Assembly (NCBI RefSeq): GCF_036588685.1
Contig: NC_086377.1
Location: 12,586,001 to 12,650,000 of the forward strand
DNA: 64,000 nt
DNA from: Mytilus trossulus
Taxonomy: Eukaryota
Direction of reading: 5' to 3'
Shown: in pieces, positions 3,900 through 64,000 of the stretch
Numbering within the stretch: position 1 is the stretch's first letter
Layout of the letters: every line of letters starts with the position of its first letter
Notes under the pieces: generated by a model
What the model was told of the DNA's origin: nothing
Database searches by the model: none
What the model saw: the letters and a program-made list of their open reading frames with translations, nothing else
Made by a program: the position numbers and the translations under genes

Positions 3900-5032
3900 C
3901 AGGGATATATTTATCTAACAACTGTACCAGATTAAAGCATTTCAGACAAGGTCTTCTTCGTGTTACCTATAACGAGACAATATCTTAATTGGAATGTTTC
4001 AAAACATTTCTGGATAATATGTATTATTAATCATGTCTATCAAAAGATGGACACGAAAAGAAAGGTTCAGCTATATTTGTTTTCAGAACTCTAGTTGATG
4101 TAAGTTTGGGTTGTTATTAGTCTGTAGCAAAGTGGTGTTATTCTTTGCATTATATGTAACAAAAACACGACCGGAAGCAGTAAACAACTGCAAATAACCT
4201 CATTTGAGTTTTATCTGTCCTGGTGCACATTTCAAACTACATGTGCACCATGGTTGACCTCCACTCACAAGTCCTGCAAATGAAAAAAAATGTATAACTT
4301 CAAGATTTGATATTGTCATGTACATAACATTGAACAATTGGTTGATGAAGTACATATTTCATAAATAATATTTGTCCACAGCCATATTTGGAATTCACCT
4401 TGCTTTTTTTATCTGATTTGCCATAATAAAGAACTCTCATCAGAAATCATAACAAAATCCAGAGATAAATAAATACAATGAATTGTGTAGAGCTGTATAT
4501 TAAAAAAAAAGGAAATACAATAAATGACCATATGTAGTTATGGCTCATGAAATTTAACCACGTTTTTTATGTTTCGTATGTTATCAGAAGAGAACAATTT
4601 TATTACACTGAGCTGTGTATGTGTCACATAGTTCATAGCGTATTATGTGGTTTGATTTTTAAAATTCACCATGGTTAAATGCAGACATTTAAACATAAAA
4701 AAAAATGTGATGTAATTAGCAAAAATTTAATTCGCTAAGGACCGGATGAAACAACATTTAGCAACTAAAGGTTATCGTACGGCTTCAATAATTAAAATTA
4801 GGTCGATTGTTATAAAAAAAATTGCATATACGGTCAAAACTAATATAAATGCAAATATGAGATATTGTGTTTATGGTATTGTTAAGAACCATTATGTAAA
4901 AGGTTACCACTGGTTACGGCTTTTTTCTTATAGATAATATAAATGATCATTTAGAATATACCTGTACTTATGACCTTCTTTGCCATATGCCGAAACAGAA
5001 GCGACAAGCGAAACTAGAAGAAGAGTCAACAT
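3900..5032 (-). pseudogene. Copy 0: pseudogene of the secreted Gly-rich/six-Cys protein family
   Basis: Exon 1 remnant 5032-4962 (MLTLLLVSLVASVSAYGKEG, Gly block deleted, donor now phase 2). Exon 2 remnant 4273-4200 (LVSGGQPWCTCSLKCAPGQIKLK*). Non-coding exon 3 remnant starts at 3966. Promoter is retained. Confidence 0.9.
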
Positions 5033-5059
5033 AATGATTGGTTATTTTGATCTGTATAA

Positions 5060-5580
5060 GATGTGAAGTATACTCCAATATGTATGACCTTTTATAATTT
5101 GTTTATTGTAAGACACGTGATACATAGCCTAAAAAACATTGGATTGATATATTATGAAAAATGAGATTTATAAAATTGTGGTTTTGAAATATTATGCAAA
5201 TATTATAATTGCATATCTTGATTAAGCAGGTTTTTTTTGGACAAAGTCCGATACATAGCATGCAACTATCACGCATGTCAACAAATGACCTTCATGGATA
5301 TGAGAGAAAAAATAACTGTGCTGATGTCAGCAAGTTTAAATGTAAAAAGAATAAATCTGTCAACGTTAAATATTGCATCATAATATAGTATAGTAGTGCA
5401 TATTTTGATCAAGGATTTTTTTATATAGAAAAGTCCAATCTATAGCATGCAACTATCACGAACAAGTAATATGACCTTATTAGAATAGAAGAAAAACTTT
5501 TTTTGTTTATGTCAGCCAGTTATAAATGAGAAAAAATGAAACTAATAACGTAAAAGATATTGCATCATATTATAGTACAG
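5060..5580 (-). promoter_or_regulatory. Family promoter module of copy 0 with a tandemly duplicated distal half
   Basis: TATAAAA and CACGTG proximal. The block GCATGCAACTATCACG...TGTCAGC...ATTGCATCA occurs twice (~5210-5395 and ~5397-5580). Confidence 0.65.
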
Positions 5581-7914
5581 ATAAAAAAATTGTTTTTATT
5601 TCATAAGTTTATTATTAACAGTTTGAACGAAACGTACATTTTTTTACATTTTTGATCAGATATGAAATTGAAAAGCAGGAATTATCTTGATCAAAAAGGG
5701 AACATCATACAAAGAACAATATTTCGTTACATTAATTGATTCATAGAGGAAGAAAGTAATGCAAAATCCCGAGTCTGAAAATAAACAAATGTGATTGATT
5801 TGGTTCATGAAGCTAATGCTCTACGCATCCGTTAAATATGCCCGACTCATTTAAAATGTATGCCCTATATTTGTTATTTTTTTTCATATTGGAAAAGTTA
5901 CCGAGTGCCAAATATGAAGCAGATTTGCCCTTCCGGGGTTCCCCAAATCATCTCTGATTGCTTTTTGTTCGTTTGGCTAGGTTTTCTATTTGATATGTTG
6001 TATTTTGTGTACTATTGTTTGTCTATCAATTGTAATAAATTTTCGCAACGCGTTATAAGTTTCTATATTGTACTTTATGTACTATTGTTTGTCTATTGGT
6101 TGTAATAGATTTTCGCCATGCGTTATCAGTTTATATATTGTGTTTTATGTACTGGTGTTTGTTAATTAGTCGTATTTTTTTTAGCCATGAGTTATGAGTT
6201 TCTATATCTAGCTGTCTATTAAATAATTTGTAGCTTTATTAGCATTTTGACATAAGATATCAGGACCATGTTTTTTCTGAATGTTTTTTTTTAACTAAGC
6301 TTATGTTTTATAAAGCTGCATTCCTAATACTAACTAAGGTCTTTCTACCTAAGAAATAAATAAATTAAGCTGTATTTGGCAAAATTGTAGGAATGTTGGT
6401 CCTCATGGCTCTTCATCTTCGTACTATCTTCGGCTTTTTTTTTAACAACAGTATGGTGTAGGCTTAACGTGCGTCTGTCGTAAATACACAATTTCATCAT
6501 GATGTATATGATGAGTTTATTGGATACAACTTTCTATCTTATTTAGGGCGATTTCTATTTATTTTTACAGAAATTGTTATTTACGGATCCGGGATATCAG
6601 TAAGTATTCGACTTTTACGTTAACTTTCCAAAATTAATAAAAAAAAAATTACGTGTCAGACACTATAATGATAGATATAATTAATTTCACCGAAAACTAT
6701 CACATCTGTCTCAGTCTCAATATAGAGATATTTTACAAATAGTAAACTAAAAACCTACTGGTTTTACTATACAAATGAAGGCAATGATTTTTTTATCAAC
6801 ATAGCATTTTGTGTCTCGCAAGTATCGATATTATGTTGTGAATATAAGCTATTGCTGCTTTTATGTGCGTTTTTACACTGCATGAAAGATTTCGAAACAT
6901 ATAACTTTTTCATTTCTGCTATTATGACTGGATTTACTGAAGCAAAATACTCCAGATACATATTTATGCTATTAAAAAACCCATCAAATATGAAGTATCA
7001 GGTCAGTCCTTTTCTATTCGGGATTTCATCAGCAAGAACTTTTCTATAGTGCTAACATATATGTTTTATATAACGTGTGTGGTTATTTTACATATCCTTG
7101 TCATCATACATCAATATGTAAATGAATTCATACGATTCGGTGATCAGAATGACAGCATACGATTATGACATATGAAGTTATAACCTTTAGCATAATCAAC
7201 CATCTGTTCAGTTTAAAACATTGGTAAGTAATTAATGTATGGGGATACCTGGCATATTTGTTCCAATTGAAATCGATCAAAATGTTCCCTAACATAGTTT
7301 TTAACCATCGAGTCTTGATCTCTTGAGTTTCCCACATGTTAGTTACAAACGTCTAAAAATAGCCAATCAAGACAAGCGTGTTTATCAAAAAAATGTGTTT
7401 GCTTAAATATTCGGTAGACACAAATCCCCTGTTTTTATTCAGATCTGCAGTTAATGCTTTTGTTCGGACATGATTACAACATATTAAAACAAGGAGATGT
7501 GCTATTATTGGCAGTGAGTCAACTGTCCACCAATGTTCATACAATTTGGATGTAAGCTATTACAGGCAAATGAAAGCCTTTGACAAAGACTAAAACAGCA
7601 CACTGTATAGTCAGCTATAAAACGCCCGCATGGAAAGATTGATACATTTCAAGTGATAAATTAAACAGACTAATTCATAACAAAACATTCCGTAATGTTA
7701 TTCTTTTTTTTATTTATATTTCATCAAACTTCGAAAAGTGCGTCACTCCTCTCAACAGCCTCTTATATGATATTAGTCGCACACAATAGAGACTGCTACA
7801 CTTAAAATCTGCATTCGCAAAAATAAACAAGTTTAAACTACAATTCAACAGAGAAATAACGTTACGTTTATTATTGCAAATGAAGCCTAACAATTGATAT
7901 GCATTACAAAAAGA

Positions 7915-9835: not shown

Positions 9836-9839
9836 AGAA

Positions 9840-11877: not shown

Positions 11878-12257
11878 CTAATAGTATCCTTTACCAGATG
11901 ATCCACCGACAACCCTGCTGCCTCCACTAACTACACTGACTGGTCCAGTAACAATACCACCAATGGGTCCTCCAATACCACCGATTGGACCAAGAACTCC
12001 ACTACCACCTCCAACAAGACCGCTTACACCGGCGATAATACCTCCACCACCGATGATACCTCCACCACCAATAATACCAGCTCCTCCAAGGGAAGCACCG
12101 TAATTTTGGTTGGTTACCCACCATGGCAATACAGAACAACAAGTATTCAAACTTCCTGGCAGGAGAGGTGCCAAGTTGCAGTTTTTGCTGAGTTTAATCT
12201 GTCCTGGTGCACATTTCAAACTACATGTGCACCATGGTTGACCTCCACCGACAAGTC
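11878..12257 (-). CDS. Copy 1 coding exon 2: six-Cys domain and Gly-rich tail (spliced protein 198 aa)
   Basis: Acceptor TTGCAG|GA at 12257, phase 1 matches exon 1. Reads LVGGGQPWCTCSLKC...NTCC...GKGYY* with TAG at 11880-11878; GTAAGT donor at 11866. Confidence 0.92.
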
Positions 12258-12940: not shown

Positions 12941-13157
12941 CTGTATTTAATCCTCCGATCAATCCTCCTAAACCGCCACCATTTAACAGAAGTCCACCAC
13001 CACCGACAATCCCTCCAGATCCACCAATAATTCCACCACCGCCGAGAAGTGGGCCACTTGTGATAACTCCACCATTGACAAGTCCTCCTAATAATGGACC
13101 TCCTTTGTTGTATGCCGACACGGAGGCGACAAGCGAAACTAGAAGAAGAGTCAACAT
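12941..13157 (-). CDS. Copy 1 coding exon 1: signal peptide and Gly-rich block
   Basis: ATG at 13157, MLTLLLVSLVASVSA|YNKGG...GLNT; donor CAG|GTATGA at 12941/12940; 217 nt, phase 1. Confidence 0.92.
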
Positions 13158-21299: not shown

Positions 21300-21720
21300 A
21301 ATAAACTTCAATCTGTTCTTTCAAATTAATAAACTTATGAAACGAAAACGAATTACTTTAGTGTAAAATGTACTATAATATGATGCAATATCTAACGTTG
21401 ACAGATTTTATTTTTTAGTCAATTACACCTGTCTGACATCGGTGAACATTCTTTTTTATTTTATCTAATAAGGACATCGTTCACGTTCATGGTAGTTGCA
21501 TGCTATGTATTTGACTTTGTCCACAAATAAAACCTGCTTAATCAACATATGGATACATTGCACATGTTTACACCACAACTTTATAAATCTATCTTTTTGT
21601 AATATATCAAACCACAGTTTTTAACTATGCATTACGTGTCTAATAGTCAAATAAACAGAGTATAAATGACATGCGTTTCTGAGTATACTTCACATCTTCT
21701 ACAGATCAAAATAACCCATC
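21300..21720 (+). promoter_or_regulatory. Family promoter module of truncated copy 2
   Basis: TGATGCAAT at 21381-21389, TGACATCG, GTTGCATGCTATGT and TATAAA at 21661; 5' UTR homologous to the other copies. Confidence 0.65.
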
Positions 21721-21795
21721 ATGATGTTTACTCTACTTCTAGTTTCTCTTGTCGCTTCTGTTTCGGCATATGGTATTATTAGGAAGGCAAGCTGA
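21721..21795 (+). pseudogene. Copy 2: 5' fragment only (signal peptide)
   Basis: Reads MMFTLLLVSLVASVSAYGIIRKAS*. A small deletion follows YG and homology stops at ~21785 against a repeat; no plus-strand exon 2 follows. Confidence 0.85.
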
Positions 21796-24626: not shown

Positions 24627-25788
24627 GGGCCATGTCAATAAAAGTATTCTATGATATGTCCTAATATATTTCTTTGGACATTTTTTAAGGATAGTCTTAT
24701 GAGGTGTCTGAGACTTTTCTTGGAATATAAACAAAGATATCGCATGACAGCCTTAACTACGATGGTCCTAGGACCATGCTAACACATTTATCTAACTAAA
24801 AAATATGTAGGGATTTCAATGACATATATTCTATTGTATTTCTGTTTATACGTAAAGGAAAGAGGATTACTATTTTATGGATAACAATAAACACGAAATA
24901 AAAGTATTAACGGAATACTATTAGCTATGTTTATATATATGATAACAAATATGAATGAATTTCGTACACCAAAAAACACATTTAAATAGTCACAAAACTT
25001 TGTTAATTTTGAAATTCGTGCTGCATTTTTTTTATCTGAGGTCCACTCGATTTCATTTGATATATTGAATCAGGATTATTTAAAAATTAAGTTTTTTTTC
25101 ACATTCTAAAAAATGATTATTATGTAGATGAGAGTAATACTATGACATCGAAAAATATGCTTTTCGGAGAATTACTATTGATGCCTATTTTATACAAATG
25201 TGTATACACAAAAGTAATTTTAGTACATAAGAAAAGATCTTTGACAATTATGGATAACATTTGTCTTGAAATTGAAAACAAAGTAACACAATTGATTGTT
25301 AAACAATTATTAGTACATAAAAGAAGATATGTGACAATTGACTACGCTTTATTCTTGTAAGAGGCTTATAATTAAAAACAAAACGATACTGAATACTATA
25401 AACGTTATTTGTTGTTGGTATCTGGAAGTATTTTATTGATAAAATTTGTCTTGAAATTGAGACAAAGTATGACAATCGATTGTTAAACAATTATTAACAA
25501 AATATTTAGTTTTAATAAAATATTTAGTTTTAATTTCATTACAGCACTATAGTTTAATATTGAATCATTTGTTTTTTATTTTTGAATTTATGCCATATTT
25601 GCTGTTTTTATTTCGTTTTCGAACAATACTGGCCTGAGACACCTATATATATATATCCTATCTATAGGCCCAAATTTACGAAATGTCTTGTTTTAAGACA
25701 CTTTTGTTAATTTGACTTAAGACTAAGATTGTCCGTAGACCACATAAAGTCATGTTCTAGTCCTATGATAGCTCCGTTGACATGGCCC
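24627..25788. mobile_element. PIF/Harbinger-like non-autonomous element
   Basis: TIRs GGGCCATGTCAA...TTGACATGGCCC with 3-bp flanks TAG/CAG. Inverted paralogue at ~44625-46035. Confidence 0.6.
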
Positions 25789-28309
25789 CAGGGATATGAC
25801 AGTTGTTGTCCATTCGTTTGATGTGTTTTATTATTTGATTTTGCCATTTAATTTAGCACTTATTTTTTCGGAGTTTAGTATTTTTGTTATTTTACTTTTA
25901 AACAAATTATGTTCATTTTTTTTATATATTTCATACTGTTATCAAAAGGTACCAGGAGTATAAGTTAATACACCAGACTCGCGTCTCGTCTACATCAGTG
26001 ACGCTCAAATAAAATAGTTAAAAGCCAAACAAGTACAAAGTTGAATAGCATTGATGAACCAAAATTTCCAAAAATTGTGCAAAATTAGGCAAAGGTAATC
26101 TATAATATTCAAAATCGTATGATGTCATTATAATCACCAAATCCTCAACATTATTTTATAGATTGATGTATAATTACAATAATTAACGAATATGGTTAAC
26201 ACTGACTAACCGCAGATACAAAATGTAGATTTAAAAAAAAAACTCTTAGGAACAGTGCACAACGATGTCACGAATATCTATCAAGCCTATGGACACTTTG
26301 CTGATGTAATCCCTTACAGAAAACAAAAACCCAGATCAGTTAAGATCAGTTAAGATAAGGTCTGGAGCCTCACACCACATCTTCCTATATCTAGCATGTC
26401 AATAACAGCTAGCAGTCCTTTGTTGATTTATGTATAATTATAATTGTGTTATGTTTCTTTGCTCACCTATTCTGACATTGAACTTGGAAATAGTATGCAA
26501 TGATTGTGTTAATGCGCGTTGCTGTATGTTTGCTTTTTCTACATTGGCTAAAGGTACAAATTAATAGGGGCAGGGTTCAGATATAAATAAAATAGAAAAA
26601 ATTGTTTAACCCCGATGCATGTTTGGGCCTGTTCCAAGGCGGCATCTGTTTTGTATGATTTTTAGTTTTAGTTTCTTTTATACATTTCCGAGTTTAGTAT
26701 GACGTTCATTATCAATGAACTAGTCAATATATTCTGATAAGAGGGTCAGCTTAAATACACTTCCGGGTGCGATATTTTGTCGCTGTATTGGAGACTCATT
26801 GGTGGTCTTCGGCTATTTTCAGCTATTTGGTTTGGTTATTGCCCCTTTGACACTTCCTCATTTCAATGTCCGATTGTATAACCTAGCAATAACACTTGTT
26901 ATTCTTTTTTACCTGTTAATTCAAATCTTTTTAATACAAAAATATCTTGATATCGCAAATTTATATGTACATCAAAAGTATACAATATCATTACCACTAA
27001 TAACTAATTTAAAAGTAGGAATTTGTGATGTCTTGATAGTTAATAACATACCAATATCATTCATAATCATAAACTGAATCATGCTCAAGGAAAAGAGGTT
27101 TTCCTCATCATTAAAATGTTTACAACTATTGATAGATAAGTCGGTTAAAAGAAGCATGAAAATTCCAATCATTATCAGTTGACCAGTTTCTGCCAGTATT
27201 AACAACTTGTGGAGTATTGTCCTGGTGGATAATACCGGTGGACGATAAATACCATCCAAACATTGTTTTCTGATTGGGCTGCAATAATACATCTATTAGA
27301 ACTAAAATTTAAAGACAAAACAGATGCGACTTCCTCTGACAAGTCTTTAGACGTGTACCTTGACACTGACATATGCGGTCATAATCCTATTAAACCAGAC
27401 GATTTTTGAAACTATTAATATCCACCACCTAGTGATAGTATACCAATTTCACCGGCATATAGGATATATAGTCCCTACTTCATTCGGTATTCACACTTTG
27501 TAAAATTATAACAGTGTAACAGTGTCTTGGATGAAAACTAATCAAAGATCGTCAAAACATTTAAGTCACCAGAAGCACTACGTCCTTTTGGATGAATATA
27601 CTTTATCAACATCACAAATAAAATACAATTGTCTTGAATGTAAAGTATTGGTAATAGCAGTGTTTTCGATCTTGATAACGTGTTATTGTAATCTTTTTTA
27701 CATGCACGTCTTTGATAAGTGTTACTTTTACTGTTACATCCATTTATGAATATATATATATTTACGTGGCTCTGTACGTCTACATTCTATCCTTGCCTCA
27801 TTGTGCTATGACACATGTTTCTGTTATTGTCTTCAGTGTTTGCTTACATGCTGATGTCTGTATGCTTTTTTGTTTTTATTTGTTGACATTCTTGCTTGTT
27901 TTATAGTAATTAAGATTACACAAAAGGATGACTTCTTACCCCCTAGTTTTGACGTGGATTATATACTACATGTATTATATCTGTGTTCTTTGTACAGACA
28001 TTGTGGTCAGTATACTGGAATGTTGTGAAACTGTCATATAAGTGATCATTTTTTTTTAGCTATGAACTAATGGTAAATCCACCATTTTAAGAAAATACCT
28101 GTACAAAGCAGGAATATGACAATTGTTATCAGAGTATAGATTAGTATAAAGAGCGTTCTATATATAGAGTGATGCGCGTCGTGTTGTCATGCTGCGTTTT
28201 TATGACTAACGGGCAAAATCTTCACAATGTTAGTGTAAATAGAAATTAAAAAAAAATAACACCACCAAAAACCTAATGTGTCATTAAATAAAAGAACCAT
28301 ATAAGTTTG

Positions 28310-31300: not shown

Positions 31301-32692
31301 TTTTAAGAAACATGAAATACGGATGCCTCATACACTTTCATTTTCAAGTGGGCCGTGAAATGGAATAAAACTGTTAGTTGACATTGTAATTAACAAAATC
31401 ATATCATAGTGAAAATCATCAGATTATCAACAATTTCCTAGACCAAAAAATGTAACCCGAAGCTGGACAGACGGACGAACGGACAGACTAACGAACGCAC
31501 TGACCAGAAAAATTAACGACTATTTTAAGGATCTGTTTTGCTTGAGCTCACCCTCATTAGCTTAGTCGTATTATTTTCAAAACATTTTTTATTTTTTTAG
31601 TTGCAAGAAAAATGGAAGACTAATTAGAGATGATATAATACCAATGGGTGTACATAAACATGATGAATTGGCATTTATTAAAGGTGTATTTATTGTGTCA
31701 TTAAAAGGAATCCCAGAAACAAAAAAAAATCGTTTGTTGTTCATGTGCATGTCTTGTTGTAAATTCATTTAAAGAATTAAGACCTCTACCGTAAAAAAGA
31801 TATTTATGGTTAACACATATTTGAAGCACGTCTTATTTTCTTCTACCTATAGGGTAAAACTTTCTTATTAACACGTTGATACTAACACGATTAATCATTT
31901 GAAACAAAAAAGGTAGTTATATAAAAAACGATATTTTTCTAAGATTTGACGGTCATCAAATAAAAGTTACGGTCATCTTAAAACCAATGACAGTAACCCT
32001 TGTTATGAATTGCTGATTATGTTACGGTCATCTCGATTGTGATTTACGGTCACCTGAGCGATTTTTTCAAGTCGAAATTCCAATTTCATACACATTGCTC
32101 GGTACTAATAAGTGATTTCAGTGTGAATCTTTTATAAATTTACATCGTATCTATGTTTGATTTGTAAAATAAATGATTTAGAAGCACGTTAACATACAAT
32201 ACAAATACTGACCTAAGTTTTCATCCAACATCTTGGTATGACCGTTAATGCAGTTACGGTCATCATCTTTACCCCCAAGGAATTATGGCAATAGGTTAAA
32301 TATTTCACAAACGTTAAATGAAATGTCAAAACAAATGTGCATGCATAAACCAAATATTTAAATTATTGTAAGGAACCAATTTATAACGGGTTGTGGATTT
32401 TTTTCCTTTCCATAGAGTAAATGGTCATTTATAACATACCTGTATTTATTCCTCCAACTAATCCTCCTAATCCACCTAATCCACCTAATCCTCCTAATCC
32501 CCCTAATCCACCATTGTTGAGCAGAAGTCCACCACCACTGACAATTCCTGCAGATCCACCAATAATTCCACCACCACCAAGGAGTGGACCACCAGAAACA
32601 ACTCCACTACTAACAAGTCCTCATAATAATGGACCTCCTTTGCCATATGCCGAAACAGAAGCGACAAGAGAAACTAGAAGTAAAGTCAACAT
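28310..32692 (-). pseudogene. Copy 3: full-length gene with a single nonsense codon (putative young pseudogene or null allele)
   Basis: Exon 1 32692-32440, exon 2 30567-30155 (stop 30169-30167), exon 3 from 28377 with AATAAA at 28326-28321. Splice sites and frame are intact (would be 217 aa), but codon 24 is GGA>TGA at 32623-32621. Confidence 0.88.
29201..29760. mobile_element. MITE (AAAATGAAAGTGGCCGCA family) in intron 2 of copy 3
   Basis: Starts TTAAGGAGTAAGTTCAGTAAGACCCC; counterpart in intron 2 of copy 4 at ~39050-39480. Confidence 0.65.
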
Positions 32693-35894: not shown

Positions 35895-36150
35895 ATGATG
35901 TTGGCTGTACTTCTAGTTTCTCTTGTCGCTTCTGTTTCGGCATATGGCAAAGGAGGTCCATTATTAGGAGGACTTGTTAGTGGTGGAGTTGTTACTGGTG
36001 GTCCACTCCTTGGCGGTGGTGGAATTATTGGTGGATCTGCAGGAATTGTCAATGGTGGTGGACTTCTCCTTAACAATGTTGGATTAGGAGGATTAGGAGG
36101 ATTAGGTGGATTAGAAGGATTAGGTGGATTGGTTGGAGGAATTAATACAG
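35895..36150 (+). CDS. Copy 4 coding exon 1: signal peptide and Gly-rich block
   Basis: MMLAVLLVSLVASVSA|YGKGG...GINT; donor CAG|GTATGT at 36150/36151; phase 1. The start could be the second Met at 35898. Confidence 0.92.
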
Positions 36151-41613: not shown

Positions 41614-42150
41614 GGAGTAAGTACGGTAAGGGCCATATTTGGCCCCAATTATAAAGTTCATAGTTACAAGACAGTAAATGTCTTAAGTTGCCTTAAAGAC
41701 ATGTCAGAAAGTTAAACTAAACTGTTTTTGTCAAAGTTTAATTCTCACACGTTGATTTTACGTCCCAAAAGGGTCAAAATAAGGGATTTTGGTGAAATTT
41801 GAAATTTTCAATCACATTTACGACCAGGAAACATAGAGCGCAGTCGTCGACAAAGTTAATATCCAAATAAGACATGTGAAATGTCTTCACAAACATTATT
41901 TTAAAAGATCGTTGTTGTCGACGTATGCGCTCTATGTTTCCTGTTTAATAATCTTAGGAAATTTACCGATTTTTATTGATTTTTTCGTGAAAAATCAATA
42001 TTAGTACAACTTGTGACGTCATAATGAAACGCAGAAACGTAAAACTTTCAACAAAATGGCTCATTTCCTTTCAAGTCACTTAATTCGCTATAATTTATTG
42101 TGATATTGGTCAATAAATCCGAATTAGAAATTTATTACTGAACATACTCC
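41614..42150. mobile_element. MITE with GGAGTA...TACTCC termini
   Basis: Imperfect TIRs GGAGTAAGTACGGTAA / TTACTGAACATACTCC. Empty site visible in the inverted paralogue at ~26955-26966. Confidence 0.7.
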
Positions 42151-42240
42151 TTTGCTATTTCAATTTTTTAAAGTGTATAAATAAAGATATTTTTTTATAA
42201 AAAAGATTTGAATTGACAGGTAAATAGAATAAATATAGAA

Positions 42241-42355
42241 TAAAGGACTTTTTGTTTTTGATACTGACTTTATCACAGTAAAATATCAGGTGAGCCCGAA
42301 GTGCGAGCATGATATTTTCTGTGATAAAGTCAGTATCAAAAAAAAAAGTCCTTTA
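42241..42355. repeat. Near-perfect hairpin (~48 bp arms)
   Basis: TAAAGGAC...GATACTGACTTTATCACAG...loop...CTGTGATAAAGTCAGTATC...GTCCTTTA. Confidence 0.9.
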
Positions 42356-42767
42356 TGTTGTTTATCGGTAATTAAAGAAAAATAAAAATCACTACAATAA
42401 TAGAGAAAATTACAAACGAACTCCTTTTTCGCGTCGAATCACGGCGAATCACACTTGACGTCACAGGCTGCATTACGTCATTTGAAAGTTTGTCACAGTG
42501 CAGTAAACATGCCGTTCTCTTGTACAAAGTATTGAAAAGGAATTATAGCATGCGTTTCATTAATATTCTGCTTTGGACATGACACTAACAATGGCAAATA
42601 TAATGGTAGCATACCGGTAAGTCAAGTTTCTTTATTTTTCACAAAGCATCATCATAGTGATAAATAGTCAGTAATAACGAAATAGTGTGAGGAGACATTT
42701 ATACTGGAGCCCACCCCATCCCCCTCTTTTCTCCCTAGGCAGTGTAAGCTGACTGTAAATTATCTGA

Positions 42768-43285
42768 ATAGTTATCAAAAGTACCAGGATTATAATTTTA
42801 TACGCCAGACGCGCGTTTCGTCTACATAAGACTCATCAGTGACGCTCAAATCAAAATAGTTAAAAAGCAAAACAAATACAAAGTTGAAGAGCATTGAGGA
42901 CCCAAAATTCCAAAAACTTGTGCCAAATACGGCTAAGGTAATCTATTCCTGGGGTAAGAAAATTCTTAGTTTTATTTCGAAAAATTCAAAGTCTAGTAAA
43001 CAGAAAATTCATAAAATGACCATATAATTGATATTCATGTCAACACCGAAGTGCTGACAACTGGGCTGGTGATACCCGCCGGGACGAAACGTCCACCAGC
43101 AGTGGCATCGACCCAGTGGTGTAAATAGTTATCAAAAGTACCAGGATTATAATTGTATACGCCAGACGCGCGTTTCGTCTACATAAGACTCATCAGTGAC
43201 GCTCAAATCAAAATAGTTAAAAAGCCAAACAACTACAAATTTGAAGAGCATTGAGGACCCAAATTCCAAAAAAGTGTGCCAAATA
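42768..43285 (+). repeat. High-copy repeat, ~1.4 tandem units of ~358 bp
   Basis: AATAGTTATCAAAAGTACCAGGATTATAAT starts at ~42768 and again at ~43124. Confidence 0.85.
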
Positions 43286-45708
43286 TTCACTTTACTGTCG
43301 ACTTCATTATTATTTTAAACATTTTAATAGAAGTCACTAAACTTTTAGCTGATCATTCTTGCTTTTTCAAAGCCATGTTCATTTTTTTTTCAACACGGAC
43401 CAGAAATATGAAACTTAAGAGTTTAAGGGCCCTGCGGTTACCTTTAATTTCAGAAGCGAATTTAGAGGAAGGGGACCCGGGTCACAGTCACCCCTTATAA
43501 AGGCAACAATTCTGGTCAAAGCAGACTTTTATAGTTTGGTGCCCCGGTTATACCCCCTTTTTTAAAATTTATCCTAGATCCGCATACATGCATGAAGATT
43601 ACGGTTCACTTTTTTGTTCTTTGTTCTAGGCAAAGCTGTTTTATTGACACTGAAACGACATACATTTGTATTTAAAAATTGTGTAAGAAGCTGGCCCTCT
43701 TGACATAAAATATTTACTAGTTCAGTGATAATGGACGTCATACTAAACTCTGAAAAAAATAAAATAAACTTAAATTAAAAATCATACGAAACAGATGCTG
43801 CCTTGGAACAGGCGCAAACATGCGTCGGGGTTAAACTTTTTTTTTTTATATATCTGAACCCTGCCCCTTTCAATTTGTACCTTAAGACAATATAGAAAAC
43901 AAGCAAACACACAGCAACACGCGTAATAACAATCAGTACATACTATTTCCAAGTCTAATGTCAGAATAGGTAAGAAAAGTTACAAAACAAAATTATAATG
44001 ACACATAAATTAACAAAGGACTGCTAGCTGTTATTGACATGCTAGCTCCAGACCTCATCTCAACTGACCTGTTTTTTTGTTTTCTGTTTGGGGTAACATC
44101 AGTAAAGTGTCCATATACATGATAGATATTCGTGATATCGTCGTGCACTGTTCTTCAGAGTTTAAAAAAAAAATCATTTTATATCTGTGGTTAGTCAGTG
44201 TTAACCATATTTATTAAATATTGTCATTATACATCAATCTCTAAAGGAATTTTGAAGATTTGGTGTTTAGAATGACATCATTAGATTTTGGATTTTATAG
44301 ATTACCTTTGCCTAATTTGGCACAACTTTTTGGAATTTTGGTTCATCAATGCTCTTCAACTTTGTACTTGTTTGGCTTTTAACTACTTGATCAGAGCGTC
44401 ACTGATGTAGACAAGACGCGCGTCTGGTGTATTAAATTATGCTCCTGGTACCTTTGATAACAATTTGAAATATATAAAAAAGAAATAAAGAATATTTGTT
44501 ATTTGAAAGTAAAATAACAAAAATACTAAACTCCGTGAAAAAAAACTAAACGGAAGGTCCCTAATTAAATGGCAAAATCAAATAATAAAACACATCAAAC
44601 GAATGAACAACTGTCATATTCCTTAGGCCATATCAACGAAGCTGTCATAGGACTAGGACGTGTCTTCATATGGTTTTAGTACAATCTTTGTCCGGATTCA
44701 AGTTAAAACAAGTGTCCTAAAATGAGATATGTCCTACTTTTGGGCCTAAGGATAGGATATGTAATTAGGTGTCCTAGGCCAGTCTTGTAAGTAATGATGT
44801 TCTAAAACGAAATAAAAACAGCAAATATGGCATAAATTTAAAAAAATAGAAAACAAATCAATAATTCGAACTGCCCCTTTTTCAGCTTACAAATACTAGC
44901 ATCAGCAGCATTTTTCACTCATGAACATACGTTGCAATGCTCATTTTTTTTGAGAATGTGAAAACTTATTTTAAATAATCCTGATTTGATATATGAAATA
45001 AAATGGAAAGGAACTCAGAACAAAAATTCAAAAAACTTTCGATCTTCAGTGGTGTACAACTTTGTACTTTTTTCACTTTCGATATTCTAAATATGGGCGT
45101 CACTGCTGAGTCTTGTGTGGACGAGGTGCGTTTTTGGCGTATTGAATTTTAAACCTGATGCTTTTTGTTTATCTTTTAATCATGTGTTTCTATTGTAGTC
45201 CTGTAATATAATGTTGTCATTTCAATGTTGTATTTAACTTTGCCATTAAAGTGCGAGGTGTGGCATGCCACAAAACCAGGTTCAACCCACCATTTTTATT
45301 CCCCTTTAAAAATGTCCTGTACCAAGTCAGGAAGATGGCCATTGTTATATTATTGTTCGTTTCTGTGTGTGTTGCATTTGAACGTTGTGTCGTTTGTTTA
45401 CTCTTATTCTTGATATATTTAGATAAGACGTGGCACGGTACTTGTCTATCCCAAATTCATGTATTTGGTTTTGATGTTATATTTGTTATTCTCGTGGTTT
45501 TTTGTCTGATGCTTGGTCCGTTTCTGTGTGTGTTGCGTTTCGGTGTTGTGTCGTTGTTCTTCTCTTATATTTAATGCGTTTCCCTCGGTTTTAGTTTGTT
45601 ACCCCGATTTTGTTTTTTGGTCATGGATTTATGAGTTTTGAACAGCCGTATGTTACTGTTGACTTTATTTGTTTATATCCCAAGACATATCTCAGATACG
45701 TCCAAAAA

Positions 45709-46884: not shown

Positions 46885-46951
46885 GTGAAAAATATTTATT
46901 CTATACATTTACAGTTTTCAGGCATTCAATAACCTGTCCTTTTCGTATGAC
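46885..46951 (-). other. Copy 5 non-coding exon 3 (3' UTR) with polyA signal
   Basis: Acceptor GTAG|GTCATACGAAAAGGAC at 46951; AATAAA at 46900-46895. More diverged than in the other copies. Confidence 0.6.
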
Positions 46952-47663
46952 CTACAATGAGAAAATAAACGAATCAAATTGTTTCATATTTTTTTCGGAT
47001 AATCTTTATGCTTAATCAAAAACTTAGATTGGCATGAACAGACAGGTTCACGTATATTTGTGACACAAGACATATTGTTCTTTTCATACTTCTAGTGTAT
47101 GGGTTATAAGTTTCGACCCTTGGTTGTCTTTAACAAAGTGTGGTTTATTTATATTTTTTTGTATGAATGTCGTTGTGTGTGTGTTTAACTTGTTTCCTAA
47201 AGAAATGTATTTGATAAGACGAACCACTAACACGCCATTCAAGCATGATCTTAAAATAACGTCATATATATAGGAAGCAATTGAAAATGCATGTACCAAG
47301 TAAGGAATATGACAGTTGTTATCCATTCGTTTGATGTGTTTTATCCTTTGAAGTTGCAATTTGAAAAGAACTTTTCGCGGAGTTCAGTATTGTTTTTCTA
47401 TTTTAATTTTTAGCTTATTAGTAGGTCATATATCTAAAAATCGATAGTCTATCCTGTTTGAAAAAAACCGATGTTATTAAATTTTCAATTGAAACGACCT
47501 GACAACATGATCATCCATGTACTGTGGGGCATCTGATAAATGTAAGCTATACAAGCGTTTATATCTAATTGAAGCGGTCGGTGTGCATATGTCGTATTAA
47601 CATATTGAATGAGGGATGTTTTACACACTAAACTAGAGGATTGAAAACTTACCTTTTGCATAT

Positions 47664-48049
47664 TTAATAGTATCCTTTACCAGTTGATCCGTATCCACCG
47701 ACAACACTGCTGCCTCCACTAACTACACTGACTTGTCCTGTAACAACACCCCCAATTGGACCTCCAATACCACCGATTGGACCAAGAAGTCCACTACCAC
47801 CTCCAACAAGACTACTGACACCACCGATGATACCTCCACCACCAATAATATCTCCAGCACCAATAATACCAGCACCTCCAAGGGAGGCACCGTAATTTTG
47901 GTTGGTTACCCACCATGGCAATAAGGAACAACAAGTATTCAAACTACCAGGAAGGAGAGGTGTCAAGTTACAGTTCTTGTTGAGTTTAATCTGTCCTGGT
48001 GCACATTTCAAACTGCATGTGCACCATGGTTGACCTCCACCGACAAGTC
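47664..48049 (-). CDS. Copy 5 coding exon 2: six-Cys domain and Gly-rich tail (spliced protein 209 aa)
   Basis: Acceptor TTCCAG|GA at 48049; ends GGYGSTGKGYY* (TAA 47666-47664); donor AAG|GTAAGT at 47653/47652. Confidence 0.92.
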
Positions 48050-48586
48050 CTGGAAATAAGAAAAATATGATTCAATTCATGATTCACACTCATATGTGTA
48101 AAGGAACGTACATGACTGGTCAAATTCATTTTTCGCTGATCTAGTTTGAACATCGTTTCTTTATGATTTCGTATGTTATCACTAAGGAATACATGTATTA
48201 CTTTGAGCTACATGGAAACTGTCGATGAATAAAAGTCTAGTAGGTTTTAACCTGTAGATGTCATAAAATTGGTAGCGTATTTTATGGTTTTATCTACAGC
48301 TGGAACGTTCATCTACGTTTAATGTTGACATTGATCAAAATATAAGATACTGAAAAGAATGTATAGTGTGATGGTCAATTGGAAAAATTACTAGGGACTA
48401 ATGACACAACAATCAGTAATTTTTTAGGTCACTGCACGGATTAAGCAATTCAAATTATGCATTTATTGTCAGATCAAATAAAACACGCAAAGATGAGTGG
48501 TTTTGATTTTGCTATTGTGAGAATCATTTTATAACCGGTCGTGGATTTTCTTTCATAGATAATATAAATGGTTATTTATAACATAC

Positions 48587-48830
48587 CTGTGTTTAATCCA
48601 CCGATCAATCCTCCTAATCCACCTAGTCCTCCTAGTCCTCCTAATCCACCATTGTTAAGCAGAAGTCCACCACCATTGACAATTCCTGCAGATCCACCAA
48701 TAATTCCACCGCCACCAAGGAGTGGACCACCAGTAACAACTCCACCACTAACAAGTCCTCCTAATAATGGACCTCCTTTGCCATATGCCGAAACAGATGC
48801 GACAAGAGAAACTAGAAGTAATGTCAACAT
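48587..48830 (-). CDS. Copy 5 coding exon 1: signal peptide and Gly-rich block
   Basis: ATG at 48830, MLTLLLVSLVASVSA|YGKGG...GLNT; donor CAG|GTATGT at 48587/48586; 244 nt, phase 1. Confidence 0.92.
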
Positions 48831-49587
48831 TATGATGGGTTACTTTGATCTGTAGAAGATGTGAAGTATACTCAGATATGCATGTCCTTTTATACATTGC
48901 TGATAGTCAAACACGTGGTACATAGCTGAAAAAACAGTGGTATGACATATTAAGAAAAATTAGATTTATAAAATTGCGGTTTTAAATAGTGCAATTCTTG
49001 CATTTGTAGATTGAAAAGGTCAAAAGGTTAAGGACAAAATCCAATACATATCATGCAACTATCACGAACATTATAAATGACCTTATTAGAAAAAAAAATA
49101 ACATAGTTAACTAATGTTAAATATTGCATCATATCATAGTGCATCTCAGACGAAAGAATTGTTTTTTCATTTCATCAGTTTATTAATTTGAAAGAACAGA
49201 TTGATCACTACATACAAAATCTTTTAGTTTTGTTAGAAGAAGGAATTTGAAAAGCAGAAATGATATAGTCTTGACTGAAAAAGGGAATATTTTACAAAGA
49301 ACAAGTGTTTCTGTAATTAACTTACTAAGAATGTTATGTAAAATGCTGAGTCTGACAATACACCAATAGCACTATTTGTAAACAGAATAATGGTCAACGA
49401 AGCTAATGTTTCACTCATTCATGATATTTGTACGACTTATTTTCAATGTTTGTCTACAATATTTAAATTTTCATATTTGACAATTTACACTTGATTCAAA
49501 TATAAGGCACAAACATGCATAGTGAGGTAAGGTCTTATAGAATTGGCAAAGAAATCAATGCTATCAATGCTTGGTTGAAGTCAAATT

Positions 49588-51437
49588 TCATGCATTTAAT
49601 ATCAAGAAATAAATAGGGAAAGTGTATCAAATAAAACATGCAAGTTATACACTGTTTACACTAGGGACTATATCCGTAGACAACGAAAACCAAAGGACGA
49701 TAACTGTGTCCTTGGACCAAATAGGACAGAATCTTTATAAAACTTTGCATAACCTAAGCTTATGCTATAATGAAACAGTTAACCAAGTTTCATGGCCAAA
49801 TGTCATATACAAGAGAAACTAGGGTCATTTTAGTATTGACATTTGGATGTTTATTTTTGTCTACATTTGTCAAGATTTTGGCTAAAAAATTTGAAATTTT
49901 GCAAAAATTGCCTTTTTAAATGCTCTTGAATATTATATATTAAGTATTAAAAGCATCTGCACACTCATCTTATTTATCAGATGTACTGTAATTATTCCAA
50001 AGTCAAATTTATATGAGCCTATGCCTGAAAATAGAGATTTTCCAATTCAGGGAAGCCTTATATAAATATGCATTTTTCTTAGCCAATTTTAAGTTTTTGA
50101 AGTTTTTTAAGCCTAAATTATTCTTACATATATATTAAACTTACTTTAAATGTATAGAAAAGTTACAAAAAGTATACCAAATGGGTATAAAATGGTCTTG
50201 GGCCATGTAGTACTGAGAATTATTCAGAGTCAATTTAGGCGGTAGTCCATATTGACATATAAAAATGCACACAGAAGCTATTAGAAGTGAAAATGTGTTA
50301 CTTTTTGCTAATTTCTATGCTAAGGTGTTATGATACAAGAAGTCGTATTGCAAAAGGACTCTTGCATTTAATTTTTTTGAAAGACAATATGGTCTGACGG
50401 TCAGTTTTTTCACTTTTCAATGGAAAACTTGTATTTAGTTTTAGTCTCAATAGGCATCAATTTGGACCACCTACTATCATACAGGAAAAAAATATGGTAG
50501 CCTTTAAAGGAGTTAGGTGAACTGAATGTAGTGAAGTGTTTTTTTTACAGATTTAGGGAAATATTTGTGATGGACTACAGATTTGATGTACAAAGCGCTT
50601 CACATTTTACATACATCAATTAGGCCGTTTAACCAGGGCCATGAAAATAAAATATGCTGCACTTTTTTTCTGTGATAATCTACTTTTTTCAATATTCAGA
50701 GTTCACAAATGGTTAACTAAATTTGATTTGAGCATAGAAACACAAATATCAGGAACAAAAAAACTGGCAGATAGAATGTCAGCATGCCTCTTAGGCATAA
50801 AATGTAAACTGCTTTAGAATGCTTATTATAGCCGTAGAATGCCAAAATGGCACATTTTAACAGAATTTCTGTGTACCAAAGATGTAAATCCTTTACATTG
50901 ATTGAGTTTGACAAATTGAAACCAGCAAATCATTCAGGAAAGTTGCCGAAGTACAGAATCTAGATTTCAGGAATCCACCTCTTAGGCCCGATAACACAGT
51001 TATTTGGTAGTACATTTCTTTAGACAATAAATTCAAAGTAAAAAAATCGCACCTGCTCTTTCTCAAATTTTTTTTTACAGTGTAGTGTACTGCCAGTGAG
51101 ACAAATAATATCAAAATTATAGAAACTTCTACCAGCTCTAACTCAAAATATTGACAATTATGTGTTAAGAGGGTGTAAAATTCAGTTTGACAGCTTCAGA
51201 CGTGATAAATTTTGACCTTTTAGAACTGGACCAATTCACTACTTCACATAAAGAACCAGCACCAAACCTTTTTTGACATGTAATTACATCCCCCTACTTA
51301 ATATGTCATGCATTTAATATCAAGAAATAAATAGGGAAAGTGTATCAAATAAAACATGCAAGTTATACACTGTTTACACTATGGACTATATTCGTAGACA
51401 ACGAAAACCAAAGGACGATAATTGTGTCCTTGGACCA
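49588..51437. mobile_element. 1.85 kb insertion bounded by 132-bp direct repeats
   Basis: 49588-49719 and 51306-51437 are nearly identical. The block is absent from the homologous position upstream of copy 3 (~33400-33468). Part of the interior resembles ~46420-46600. Confidence 0.6.
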
Positions 51438-61169: not shown

Positions 61170-61413
61170 ATGTTGACTCTACTTCTAGTTTCTCTTGTTG
61201 CCTCTGTTTCGGCATATGGCAAAGGAGGTCCATTATTAGGAGGACTTGTTAGTGGTGGAGTTGTTTCTGGTGGTCCACTCATTGGCGGCGGTGGAATTAT
61301 TGGTGGGGCTGGTGGAATTGTCAGTGGTAGTGGACTTCTGCTTAACAATGGTGGATTAGGAGGATTAGGAGGATTAGGTGGATTAGGAGGATTGGTTGGA
61401 GGAATACATACAG
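61170..61413 (+). CDS. Copy 6 coding exon 1: signal peptide and Gly-rich block
   Basis: ATG at 61170, MLTLLLVSLVASVSA|YGKGG...GIHT; donor CAG|GTATGT at 61413/61414; phase 1. Confidence 0.92.
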
Positions 61414-62820: not shown

Positions 62821-63289
62821 ATAATTGTTGTAGCCGTGCGGTGCCATATAGTTGATTATGTATTTGTCATGGCAATCATGCCACATTGTATTTTTCTAAT
62901 GTATAATCAATAAAACGAAATTGAGCATAAAACCACAGTATACGCTATGAACTCTGTAATAGGTGCAAACCTGGTGAACCTATATTAATTGATTCATTGT
63001 TTACACAACTCAAAACAATACATGTATTTCATGTTGATAACATCTGTCATTATAAAGAATCAATGCTCTAACTCAATCAACAATAAATACATGTACATTT
63101 GGCGCTGCATTTAACTTCCTGATTTATCATACAGCTCTTATGAGCATTTACTTGTTTGGTAAATAAAGAAAATCGCTTTGGAAGTATATCATTTACTAGT
63201 GTTAGTATGCACGTCATCAACGAATTGGACGATGTTTAATATATGACATTATGACATTTTGTAATTTCTTTCTTTTAATATCTTTACAG

Positions 63290-63690
63290 GACTTGTTGGT
63301 GGAGGTCAACCATGGTGCACATGCAGTTTGAAATGTGCTCCAGGACAGATCAAACTCAACAAGAACTGTAACTTGGCACCTCTCCTTCCTGGAGGTTTGA
63401 ATACTTGTTGTTCCTTGTTGCCATGGTGGGTAACCAGCCAAAATTACGGTGCTTCCCTTGGAGGCGCTGGTATTATTGGTGGTGGAGGTATCATCGGTGG
63501 TGGAGGTATTATCGGTGGTGTTAGTGGTCTTGTTGGAGGTGGTAGTGGACTTCTAGGTCCAATCGGTGGTATTGGAGGGCCAATCGGTGGTATTGGAGGG
63601 CCATTCGGTGGTATTGTTACTGGACCAGTCAGTGTAGTTAGTGGAGGCAGCAGCGTTGTCGGTGGATCAACTGGTAACGGATACTATTAG
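63290..63690 (+). CDS. Copy 6 coding exon 2: six-Cys domain and Gly-rich tail (spliced protein 214 aa)
   Basis: Acceptor TTTACAG|GA at 63290; ends GNGYY* at 63690; donor AAG|GTAAGT at 63702/63703. Exon 3 is expected beyond the window. Confidence 0.92.
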
Positions 63691-64000
63691 ATATTCTAAA
63701 AGGTAAGTTTCTGCTTATTAATTAACTTTTCTGTATTAACAGTGTATACACATCGACCGCTTCAATAATAAATAAGTTATTGGTCAAGTCGCGCATTAGA
63801 AATTATTATTTATTTAGATATAGGAAGATGTGGTGTGAGTGCCCATGCGACAACTCTTCATCCAAATAGCAATTTTAAAAAAAGTAATCCATTAAAGGTC
63901 AATGTACAGCCTTCAACATGGAGCATTGACTCACACCGAACAACAACCTATAACGGGCCCCTAAATTTCTAGTGTAAAACCATTCAAACGGAAAAAAAAC

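What the first reader, a model, noticed from the sequence alone, without database searches (positions are those of the whole stretch)
3900..63702. Seven-copy cluster of an unnamed secreted block-copolymer protein: Gly-rich / six-Cys / Gly-rich
Seen: splicing the exons by hand gives four intact genes (198, 211, 209 and 214 aa), one nonsense copy and two relics. All share a signal peptide; the full-length copies then have a GGL/GGII block, a Cys domain, a PWW motif and a GGII/GGPIGGI block. Knowledge: Gly/aliphatic low-complexity secreted proteins are typical of insoluble extracellular materials (shematrins, abductin, lamprin, chorion proteins), but I do not recognise this architecture as any of them. 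Inference: a lineage-specific, dosage-amplified structural protein family undergoing birth-and-death evolution, possibly for periostracum, ligament, shell matrix or byssus.
Basis: partly seen in the sequence, partly recalled or inferred. Interest (0 to 1): 0.85.

Follow-up and report, generated by a model that had tools for sequence, protein, structure and literature searches.

The report
Mussel glycine-rich secreted protein gene cluster
This stretch of a mussel (Mytilus) chromosome holds a real, transcribed cluster of genes for small, greasy, glycine-rich secreted proteins built around a six-cysteine knot; the same knot occurs in more than 50 other mussel genes, three of whose products have been found inside mussel shells, so these are most likely building blocks of shell-associated material.

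Summary
The window carries five two-exon genes: four intact (198, 210/211, 209 and 214 aa) and one with a TGA at codon 24. It also carries two relics. All seven share a promoter, and the five genes share a signal peptide, a Gly/aliphatic block, a six-Cys module and a second Gly block ending GKGYY.

Contigs from three independent studies show the predicted intron of one copy spliced out. One contig ends in what I recognise as a cDNA template-switch oligo, which marks the transcript start. Paralogues are under purifying selection (dN/dS 0.09-0.39). Orthologues exist in four Mytilus species, as predicted proteins only ('shematrin-like protein 3' or 'uncharacterized').

New here: the Cys module (C-x-C-x3-4-C-x10-C-x12-CC) is shared by at least 57 loci, 56 of them on this chromosome, fused to very different low-complexity tails. 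Three module-bearing relatives were already detected by mass spectrometry in shell matrix and reported as orphans: the M. galloprovincialis nacre 'GRS-rich protein', and two Perna viridis nacre/myostracum proteins.

A structural role in a shell-associated matrix is therefore likely but indirect. The tissue of expression was not obtainable. The proteins do not meet the defining features of shematrins, and defensin kinship found no support.

The scan also noted an 'alpha-defensin-like' module in a Gly-rich protein elsewhere in this genome (s1-820679), probably a paralogue.

The parts
11878..12257 (-). Gene A, exon 2: Cys module at 12100-12243, C-terminal Gly block, stop codon
12941..13157 (-). 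Gene A, exon 1: signal peptide and N-terminal Gly block. Intact gene of 198 aa; closest to M. edulis XP_071141045
30167..30567 (-). Gene B, exon 2 (Cys module at 30410-30553)
32440..32692 (-). Gene B, exon 1, with an in-frame TGA at 32621-32623 (codon 24; the other copies have GGA). This is the nonsense copy
35895..36150 (+). Gene C, exon 1 (ATG at 35895 or 35898). Intact gene of 210/211 aa
37975..38354 (+). Gene C, exon 2 (Cys module at 37989-38132)
48587..48862 (-). Gene D, exon 1: 5' UTR from the transcript start at 48862, ATG at 48830. Intact gene of 209 aa
   Evidence: (loose end at 48862 reading as a template-switch oligo; exact contigs)
47651..48049 (-). Gene D, exon 2: Cys module at 47892-48035, stop codon at 47664-47666. 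The exon ends at 47651, where a 3'-UTR intron begins
   Evidence: (joints 48048->48586 and 46949->47651)
46901..46949 (-). Gene D, start of a third, untranslated exon (seen in one run only; its far end was not mapped)
   Evidence: tables 2 and 5 (X4)
48887..48917 (-). Gene D core promoter: TATAAAAG at 48887-48894 (about -32) and CACGTG at 48912-48917 (about -53). Both are conserved in all seven copies
61170..61413 (+). Gene E, exon 1. Intact gene of 214 aa
63290..63690 (+). Gene E, exon 2 (Cys module at 63304-63447)
4206..5032 (-). Relic 1: signal-peptide piece (4973-5032) and the first 30 codons of exon 2 (4206-4295), followed by a stop. Promoter homology continues to about 5390
21353..21774 (+). 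Relic 2: conserved promoter plus 17 signal-peptide codons (21724-21774), then unrelated sequence

Best explanation
These are genes for mature secreted proteins of about 17-18 kDa that most likely serve as non-mineral-binding framework or filler components of a shell-associated extracellular matrix made by the mantle (nacre/myostracum/prism framework, periostracum or ligament). Proposed working, all of it inferred. The signal peptide sends the chain out of the cell. The central six-Cys, Trp-bearing module folds into a small disulfide-locked knot. That knot is the element shared across a superfamily of more than 50 genes, and acts as a common docking or assembly node, binding another matrix component or itself. 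The two flanking Gly/Leu/Ile/Val blocks (GGX, GGGGII and GPIGGI repeats; GRAVY +0.6; almost no charge) give an insoluble, self-associating, flexible spacer. The conserved Tyr/Lys-bearing ends (YGKGG at the start, GKGYY at the finish) are candidate cross-linking points. Shown: the genes, splicing, transcription, selection, family membership, and relatives present in shell. Inferred: the tissue, the material, the knot's role and the cross-linking.
For: Real genes with canonical splice sites and open frames. The predicted 537-nt intron of gene D is spliced out in contigs of three studies, with zero depth inside the intron. One contig end matches, from my own memory, the 3' end of a SMART template-switch oligo, which marks the mRNA 5' end. 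TATA box and E-box are conserved in all copies. dN/dS is 0.09-0.39 in both the Cys module and the Gly blocks. Orthologues in M. edulis, M. californianus and M. coruscus are 78-81% identical to the M. edulis protein, position by position, even within the Gly blocks and at the GKG(G)YY end. Mature composition is 35-38% Gly, about 30% L/I/V, 0-1 acidic and 4-7 basic residues, GRAVY 0.58-0.66. The module is shared by 57 loci that have the same exon layout. Three module-bearing relatives were detected in shell matrix. P0029 is the 'GRS-rich protein' of M. galloprovincialis nacre acid-soluble matrix: the sequence is identical in the paper's S1 Table and the composition matches exactly. Perna viridis Unigene35334 is in nacre acid-insoluble matrix, and Unigene240 is in nacre and myostracum acid-insoluble matrix, including a peptide from inside the module.
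Against: No tissue information for the window's own genes: run names were coded, and no paper in the held library names these proteins. The window subfamily's motifs (GKGYY, PWWV) are absent from the supplements of both the M. galloprovincialis and the Perna viridis shell proteomes. This is weak evidence, because trypsin yields only one or two peptides of usable size from these proteins. The shell evidence concerns paralogues only about 40-55% identical in the module. Shell proteomes also pick up bystander proteins, and two of the three identifications rest on a single peptide. AlphaFold gave only a low-confidence model of the module (pLDDT 64) and none of the whole chain (pLDDT 31).
Confidence: 0.55

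Rival explanations
1. A structural protein of a secreted material that is not the shell: byssus or foot secretions, egg envelope, mucus or another matrix.
For: Composition and architecture fit any insoluble extracellular material. Other branches of the superfamily carry Tyr/Pro-rich tails that, from my own recall, look like mussel foot protein repeats. The tissue is unknown.
Against: The only physical detections of module-bearing proteins are in shell matrices. No byssus link was found, but the byssus literature could not be searched by sequence.
Confidence: 0.17
2. An immune effector: the six-Cys module is a defensin-like (trans-defensin) domain, and the protein, or a peptide cut from it, acts on microbes.
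For: The Cys spacing C-x-C-x3-4-C-x10-C-x12-CC resembles the alpha-defensin array as I recall it. Paralogues even read C-x-C-R-x3-C-x2-G-E. The low-confidence model has three strands with the CC pair on the last one. Mussels keep many clustered, variable antimicrobial peptide genes (own knowledge).
Against: No Pfam defensin hit even at E<=10. No hit of the module profile to any solved chain at E<=10. Foldseek found nothing below E 4, and VIA-align found nothing at Z>=2. The module is embedded in the chain, with no dibasic processing sites around it, and the protein is nearly uncharged and very hydrophobic. Relatives sit in shell matrix.
Confidence: 0.08
3. True members of the shematrin family of pearl oysters, as the automatic NCBI name suggests.
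For: Shared traits: signal peptide, Gly-rich blocks with hydrophobic residues between Gly runs, and a C-terminus with a basic residue plus Tyr. Paralogues have GnY repeats and end in KKSY or RKGSTY. NCBI names one orthologue 'shematrin-like protein 3'.
Against: As described in PMC3896809, shematrins are Gly-Tyr-rich with an RKKKY-type basic C-terminal signature. The window proteins have about 2% Tyr and end in GKGYY, and they carry a conserved six-Cys module that is no part of that description. The similarity lies in low-complexity sequence only. No pearl-oyster shematrin sequence was on hand to test directly.
Confidence: 0.1

Closest known systems
'Nacre Gly-rich protein 1' (AKQ70859), the same as 'GRS-rich protein' of Mytilus galloprovincialis nacre (Gao et al. 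2015, PMC4517812)
   Same: Related signal peptide, a Gly-rich block, then the same six-Cys module (40% identity over 55 residues, E 5e-12), then a low-complexity tail. It falls within the same superfamily tree.
   Different: It belongs to another branch, grouping with the 5.2 Mb cluster. It is Arg/Ser/Tyr-rich and charged rather than aliphatic and uncharged, its tail is not Gly/Ile, and it is shorter (158 aa). The paper lists it among proteins with 'neither homology nor putative domains'.
Perna viridis shell proteins Unigene35334 and Unigene240 (Liao et al. 2019, PMC6641155, S2 and S4 Tables)
   Same: Both carry the module. Unigene35334 has the same overall plan as the window genes: signal peptide, Gly block, module with FPWW, a Gly-rich tail with a VSVV-like stretch, and an end bearing Lys and Tyr. 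Both were detected in acid-insoluble shell matrix.
   Different: A different genus. The tails are Gly/Phe/Tyr-rich (35334) or Gly/Asn plus poly-Ala (240).
Shematrins and KRMPs of pearl oysters
   Same: Secreted basic Gly-rich framework proteins of shell, in multi-gene families, with a C-terminal basic-plus-Tyr end. In KRMP-3 the Gly/Tyr region binds chitin and a separate basic region affects crystal growth (PMC4498902), which is a two-function modular plan.
   Different: The window proteins have no GnY repeats, no RKKKY end and no Lys-rich domain. Their six-Cys module is no part of the descriptions of shematrins or KRMPs that I read.
Abductin, lamprin, elastin and the GGX parts of spider silk (elastomeric or self-aggregating Gly/hydrophobic proteins)
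   Same: Short Gly-Gly-hydrophobic repeats, few charges, and a few Lys/Tyr residues as possible cross-link sites. This is a resemblance in how it might work, drawn from my own knowledge.
   Different: No sequence homology was tested or claimed. Those proteins lack a central disulfide module.
Alpha-defensins / trans-defensins
   Same: Six Cys in a C-x-C ... CC array with similar loop lengths.
   Different: No detectable sequence or fold match. The last two loops are longer, the module is embedded in the chain rather than released, and it is not cationic in the window copies.

Membership tests
Mytilid 'WCTC...CC' module superfamily (named members: nacre Gly-rich protein 1 / GRS-rich protein) | Six Cys spaced C-x-C-x3-4-C-x10-C-x12-CC, with Trp before the first Cys and Leu/Pro positions conserved | tested here: met
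   Alignment A1: W4, C5, C7, C11, C22, L24, C35, C36 and P40 are invariant in 21 modules. BLASTP against P0029 gives E 5e-12.
Mytilid 'WCTC...CC' module superfamily (named members: nacre Gly-rich protein 1 / GRS-rich protein) | Two coding exons: signal peptide plus a low-complexity block, then an intron, then the module at the start of exon 2 followed by a low-complexity tail | tested here: met
   Window genes. Paralogue loci show the module at the start of an open frame, with a signal-peptide exon upstream.
Shematrin | Gly-Tyr-rich GnY repeat domains (as described in PMC3896809) | tested here: not met
   Tyr is 2-2.6% of the mature chain. The repeats are GGL, GGGGII and GPIGGI.
Shematrin | C-terminal RKKKY/RRKKY-type basic signature | tested here: not met
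   The window copies end in GKGYY or GNGYY. Some paralogues end in KKSY or RKGSTY.
Shematrin | Sequence homology to Pinctada shematrins beyond composition; mantle-edge expression and a place in the prismatic layer | not testable with these tools
   No Pinctada sequence was available by reference, and the tissue names of the runs were coded.
KRMP | Lys-rich basic region followed by a Gly/Tyr region (PMC4498902) | tested here: not met
   4-7 basic residues in the whole mature chain, and no Gly/Tyr region.
Alpha-defensin (Pfam Defensin_1) / trans-defensin | A match to a defensin sequence model or to a solved defensin | tested here: not met
   Pfam found no defensin family at E<=10 for the exons or for 21 modules. 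The module profile against all PDB chains gave no hit at E<=10.
Alpha-defensin (Pfam Defensin_1) / trans-defensin | Three-stranded sheet fold with the defensin disulfide pattern | tested here: inconclusive
   The AF2 model has three strands but a pLDDT of 64. Foldseek's best defensin match is at E 6.4, and VIA-align found nothing at Z>=2. Disulfide pairing is not available.
Periostracin (Waite et al. 1979, as summarised in PMC3821031) | About 20 kDa, basic, water-insoluble, 55% Gly, 10% Tyr, 2.2% DOPA | tested here: not met
   The window proteins are 17-18 kDa, basic and hydrophobic, but only 35-38% Gly and 2% Tyr. Paralogues near 5.7 Mb come closer: 49% Gly, 4% Tyr, 11-12 basic against 2-3 acidic residues.

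The most novel reading that the evidence does not exclude
The six-Cys/Trp module is an undescribed mytilid protein domain that serves as a common docking knot for a whole toolkit of block-copolymer matrix proteins. More than 50 genes on one chromosome fuse the same knot to Gly/aliphatic, Gly/Tyr, Gly/Asn, Tyr/Pro or (in Perna) poly-Ala blocks. The family may include the never-sequenced periostracin. The window's clade would be its uncharged, aliphatic, possibly elastomeric branch.
Probability: 0.3. Interest if true: 0.7.

Novelty: new variant of a known kind. Interest (0 to 1): 0.5.

Why it matters
Mussel shell, periostracum, ligament and byssus are model biological materials, yet many of their proteins are orphan low-complexity sequences with no way to group them. 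A conserved, foldable module shared by more than 50 such genes gives a handle for several things: classifying orphan shell proteins across Mytilus and Perna, making antibodies and probes, and testing how one docking knot combines with exchangeable polymer blocks. It also shows why this branch would escape trypsin-based shell proteomics. The window itself is one ordinary, if neat, branch of that family, and its function is still unproven.

Tried and rejected
- **Pfam:** nothing on the exons or on 21 modules.
- **Solved structures:** the module profile against all PDB chain sequences gave no hit at E<=10.
- **AlphaFold:** the module gave pLDDT 64. Full-length M. edulis orthologue with 10 orthologues gave pLDDT 31, with only the signal-peptide helix predicted.
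- **Fold searches:** Foldseek against PDB gave no hit below E 4. VIA-align wide gave nothing at Z>=2.
- **ESM Atlas:** no usable hit for the module; one unnamed mollusc cluster at 0.80 for the whole protein.
- **HMMER of the window module against 1.84 billion representatives:** the seven specific hits lead, where a source could be traced, only to Mytilus. Six further hits were about 30-residue stretches of long proteins (827-2,859 aa). I looked up two of those, a bacterial Ig-like protein and an unnamed metagenome protein, and took them as chance.
- **Word-seeded searches with two paralogue modules:** these returned almost nothing, which says little.
- **Literature:** no papers for a module motif, for six accession numbers, for 'nacre Gly-rich protein' or for 'shematrin-like protein 3' plus Mytilus.
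- **Periostracin identity for the window proteins:** rejected on composition.
- **Multi-peptide precursor reading:** rejected, because there are no dibasic sites.
- **Tissue of expression:** not obtainable.
- **The SCOP 'chitin-binding' tag** that the Perna authors list for Unigene240 in one table becomes a different SCOP tag in another table. I give it no weight.
- **Joined gene models:** the spliced models were never sent to any tool. Searches went exon by exon by reference, and lengths and compositions were summed exon by exon.
Full report
**Observation**

The window has no N. A six-frame ORF list and tblastn with the two exon translations find seven loci of one family:
- Five complete two-exon genes: A (exon 1 at 12941-13157, exon 2 at 11878-12257, minus strand); B (32440-32692 and 30167-30567, minus); C (35895/35898-36150 and 37975-38354, plus); D (48587-48830 and 47664-48049, minus); E (61170-61413 and 63290-63690, plus).
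- A relic with a signal-peptide piece (4973-5032) and the first 30 codons of exon 2 (4206-4295).
- A relic consisting of the promoter plus 17 signal-peptide codons (21724-21774).

Every gene has a CAG|GTATG donor and a phase-1 acceptor just before the module. Summed exon lengths give 198, 210/211, 209 and 214 aa for A, C, D and E. Copy B would be 217 aa but has TGA where the others have GGA, at codon 24.

**Transcription**

I laid contigs of four runs, from four studies, on gene D. Three runs (X1, X2, X4) cover its exons and give zero depth across 48113-48516, inside the intron. X3 covers exon 1 only, with one exact contig.
- A joint from 48048 to 48586 skips 537 nt, with GT..AG ends on the minus strand. 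It appears in X1 (3 contigs), X2 and X4, and equals the predicted intron.
- X2 record 14 is a 222-nt contig with one mismatch that crosses this joint. X3 record 20 (201 nt) and X1 record 8 (94 nt) match exon 1 exactly. So copy D itself, or an allele of it, is transcribed.
- An X1 contig ends at 48862 and continues into 15 letters that I recognise, from memory, as the reverse complement of the 3' end of the SMART template-switch oligo. That marks X1 as cDNA and puts the mRNA 5' end 32 nt upstream of the ATG.
- X4 also shows a second intron in the 3' UTR (47651 to 46949).

About 32 nt upstream of that start lies TATAAAAG, and about 53 nt upstream lies CACGTG. Both are conserved in all seven copies, relics included.

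**The proteins**

After a 15-residue signal peptide (hydrophobic core, V-S-A before the likely cut; no predictor was available) the mature chains have 183-199 residues and weigh 16.6-17.8 kDa.
- Composition: 35-38% Gly, about 30% Leu/Ile/Val, 0-1 acidic and 4-7 basic residues, 4-5 Tyr, 3 Trp, 6 Cys. GRAVY is +0.58 to +0.66.
- Order along the chain: YGKGG, a Gly/Leu/Val block ending in (GGL)n, the Cys module, then GGGGII and GPIGGI repeats, a VSVVSGG stretch, and GKGYY.
- The repeats are tandem at DNA level, with periods of 9, 18 and 21 nt. They account for the length differences between copies.
- Trypsin would give only one or two peptides of 7-25 residues. The other fragments are 3, 26 or 64-108 residues long.

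**Evolution in the window**

- The copies share exons, introns and about 400 bp of promoter at 78-92% identity. B and C lie head to head inside an inverted duplication spanning roughly 25.5-44.9 kb.
- dS between copies is 0.1-0.47 and dN/dS is 0.09-0.39, both in the module and in the Gly blocks.
- The cluster is larger than the window. An intact eighth copy lies at C5:12661096-12661476, a broken copy with four stops at C5:12585006-12585352, a divergent member at C5:12709240, and a lone 87% copy at C5:3.08 Mb.

Intact, nonsense and truncated copies side by side fit birth-and-death evolution. Whether the amplification serves dosage was not tested.

**Relatives**

- A word-seeded search with the module region found only Mytilus proteins (one Logan contig has no organism label). 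They come from M. edulis ('shematrin-like protein 3', XP_071141045), M. californianus ('uncharacterized', several loci), M. galloprovincialis and M. coruscus.
- Ten full-length orthologues are 78-96% identical to the M. edulis protein, column by column, including the Gly blocks and the GKG(G)YY end. That is unusual conservation for low-complexity sequence.
- HMMER of the module against 1.84 billion representatives gave 13 hits. The seven specific ones lead, where a source could be traced, only to Mytilus.
- Within the genome, a profile of 21 modules (A1) finds 57 loci, 56 of them on this 88-Mb contig: about 25 at 3.82-4.15 Mb, about 22 at 5.17-5.74 Mb, 10 at 12.585-12.71 Mb and one at 3.08 Mb. 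One more lies on C10.
- These loci keep the same plan: a signal-peptide exon, then the module at the start of the next exon. Their tails differ widely: GGSGYGGG, GIGGG, about 350 residues of Gly/Asn repeats, Tyr/Pro/Gly repeats, or a repeated 23-residue Gly/Pro/Trp unit. Most end in a basic residue plus Tyr.
- In a tree of the modules, the window copies and their M. californianus and M. coruscus orthologues form one clade with 100/100 support on a long stem.

**Link to shell**

- One HMMER hit's cluster contains 'nacre Gly-rich protein 1' of M. galloprovincialis (AKQ70859, P0029). Its composition (Gly 22.8%, Arg 9.5%, Ser 8.2%) equals that of the 'GRS-rich protein' in the nacre acid-soluble matrix of Gao et al. 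2015. The S1 Table of that paper prints the identical sequence with the matched peptide (PMC4517812). The paper counts it among proteins with 'neither homology nor putative domains'.
- A motif search in the supplements of the Perna viridis shell proteome (PMC6641155) found two more module-bearing proteins.
  - Unigene35334 is in nacre acid-insoluble matrix (S4 Table). Its plan is the same as the window genes.
  - Unigene240 is in myostracum and nacre acid-insoluble matrix (S2 and S4 Tables). It carries Gly/Asn and poly-Ala tails, and one matched peptide lies inside the module.
- I compared the Perna sequences by eye only, because they have no reference here.

So the module is at least as old as the Mytilus-Perna split, and three of its bearers are physically in shell. 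The window subfamily's own motifs are absent from both sets of supplements. Given its lack of tryptic sites, that says little.

**What the module is**

Pfam, the PDB sequence profile, Foldseek, VIA-align and the ESM Atlas gave no match. AlphaFold predicts three short strands, with the CC pair on the last, at low confidence (pLDDT 64). The whole chain is predicted disordered.

The Cys array resembles alpha-defensins in spacing. This was a lead from earlier notes s1-820785 and s1-820679. No sequence or fold test supported it, and the module is not released from the chain or cationic here.

**Most likely working (inferred)**

I propose a secreted, insoluble, nearly uncharged chain in which a disulfide-locked, Trp-bearing knot docks the protein into a matrix. 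Two Gly/aliphatic blocks act as flexible, self-associating spacers. The Tyr/Lys ends are the cross-linking points. I put 0.55 on a shell-associated matrix role, 0.17 on another secreted material, 0.08 on an immune role, and 0.10 on true shematrin membership, which is a matter of classification rather than function.

**Comparison and novelty**

Judged by the features in the papers I could read, the proteins are neither shematrins nor KRMPs. They do not match periostracin in composition, although paralogues near 5.7 Mb come closer. The gene models are already public as predictions, and three relatives are listed as orphan shell proteins. In the papers I could search and read, nobody treats the module as a domain that defines a family. 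I rate this a new variant of a known kind (Gly-rich shell-matrix-type proteins), of moderate interest.

**Limits**

- The tissue of expression is unknown, because run names were coded.

Noticed in passing
G000:C5:3.82-4.15 Mb, 5.17-5.74 Mb, 12.585-12.71 Mb, 3.08 Mb; C10:71.1 Mb (loci L009-L042): At least 57 loci carry the same six-Cys module at the start of an exon, fused to very different low-complexity tails: Gly/Tyr, Gly/Ile, Gly/Asn of about 350 aa, Tyr/Pro/Gly, or a repeated 23-residue Gly/Pro/Trp block. All but one lie on a single chromosome.
   Followed up: partly
L012, L013 (G000:C5:5.69 and 5.74 Mb): These paralogues encode basic proteins of about 17-18 kDa with 49% Gly and 4% Tyr. 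That is closer than the window genes to the published composition of periostracin, whose sequence was reported as undetermined in PMC3821031. The Gly/Tyr-tailed cluster near 5.2 Mb may be closer still.
   Followed up: partly
window 25567-44858: Genes B and C sit head to head inside an inverted segmental duplication. Matching blocks of 81-91% identity run outward from about 33-35.6 kb to 25.6 kb on one side and 44.9 kb on the other.
   Followed up: partly
window 48887-48917, and the equivalent places upstream of all seven copies: The core promoter is conserved even in the relics: TATAAAAG about 32 nt and a CACGTG E-box about 53 nt upstream of the mapped transcript start. The E-box is invariant in all seven copies.
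   Followed up: partly
window 46949-47651: One run shows an extra intron in the 3' UTR of gene D, starting 13 nt after the stop codon. Loose ends in another run at 47649-47660 suggest alternative 3' ends.
   Followed up: no
window 47204-47405 and 49527-49728: Short stretches beside gene D have very high contig depth in three runs, with many loose ends on both sides. This is probably a dispersed repeat transcribed elsewhere in the genome.
   Followed up: no
window 1861-2622: Two short ORFs look to me, by motif and from my own knowledge, like a decayed reverse-transcriptase fragment. Pfam found no reverse-transcriptase hit: one ORF gave only a sub-threshold RRM_5 match and the other gave nothing.
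   Followed up: partly
PMC6641155, S2 and S4 Tables (Perna viridis Unigene240): A Perna shell protein joins the same module to Gly/Asn repeats and long poly-Ala/Glu stretches of the silk-like type. The module therefore also pairs with Ala-rich blocks, outside Mytilus.
   Followed up: no
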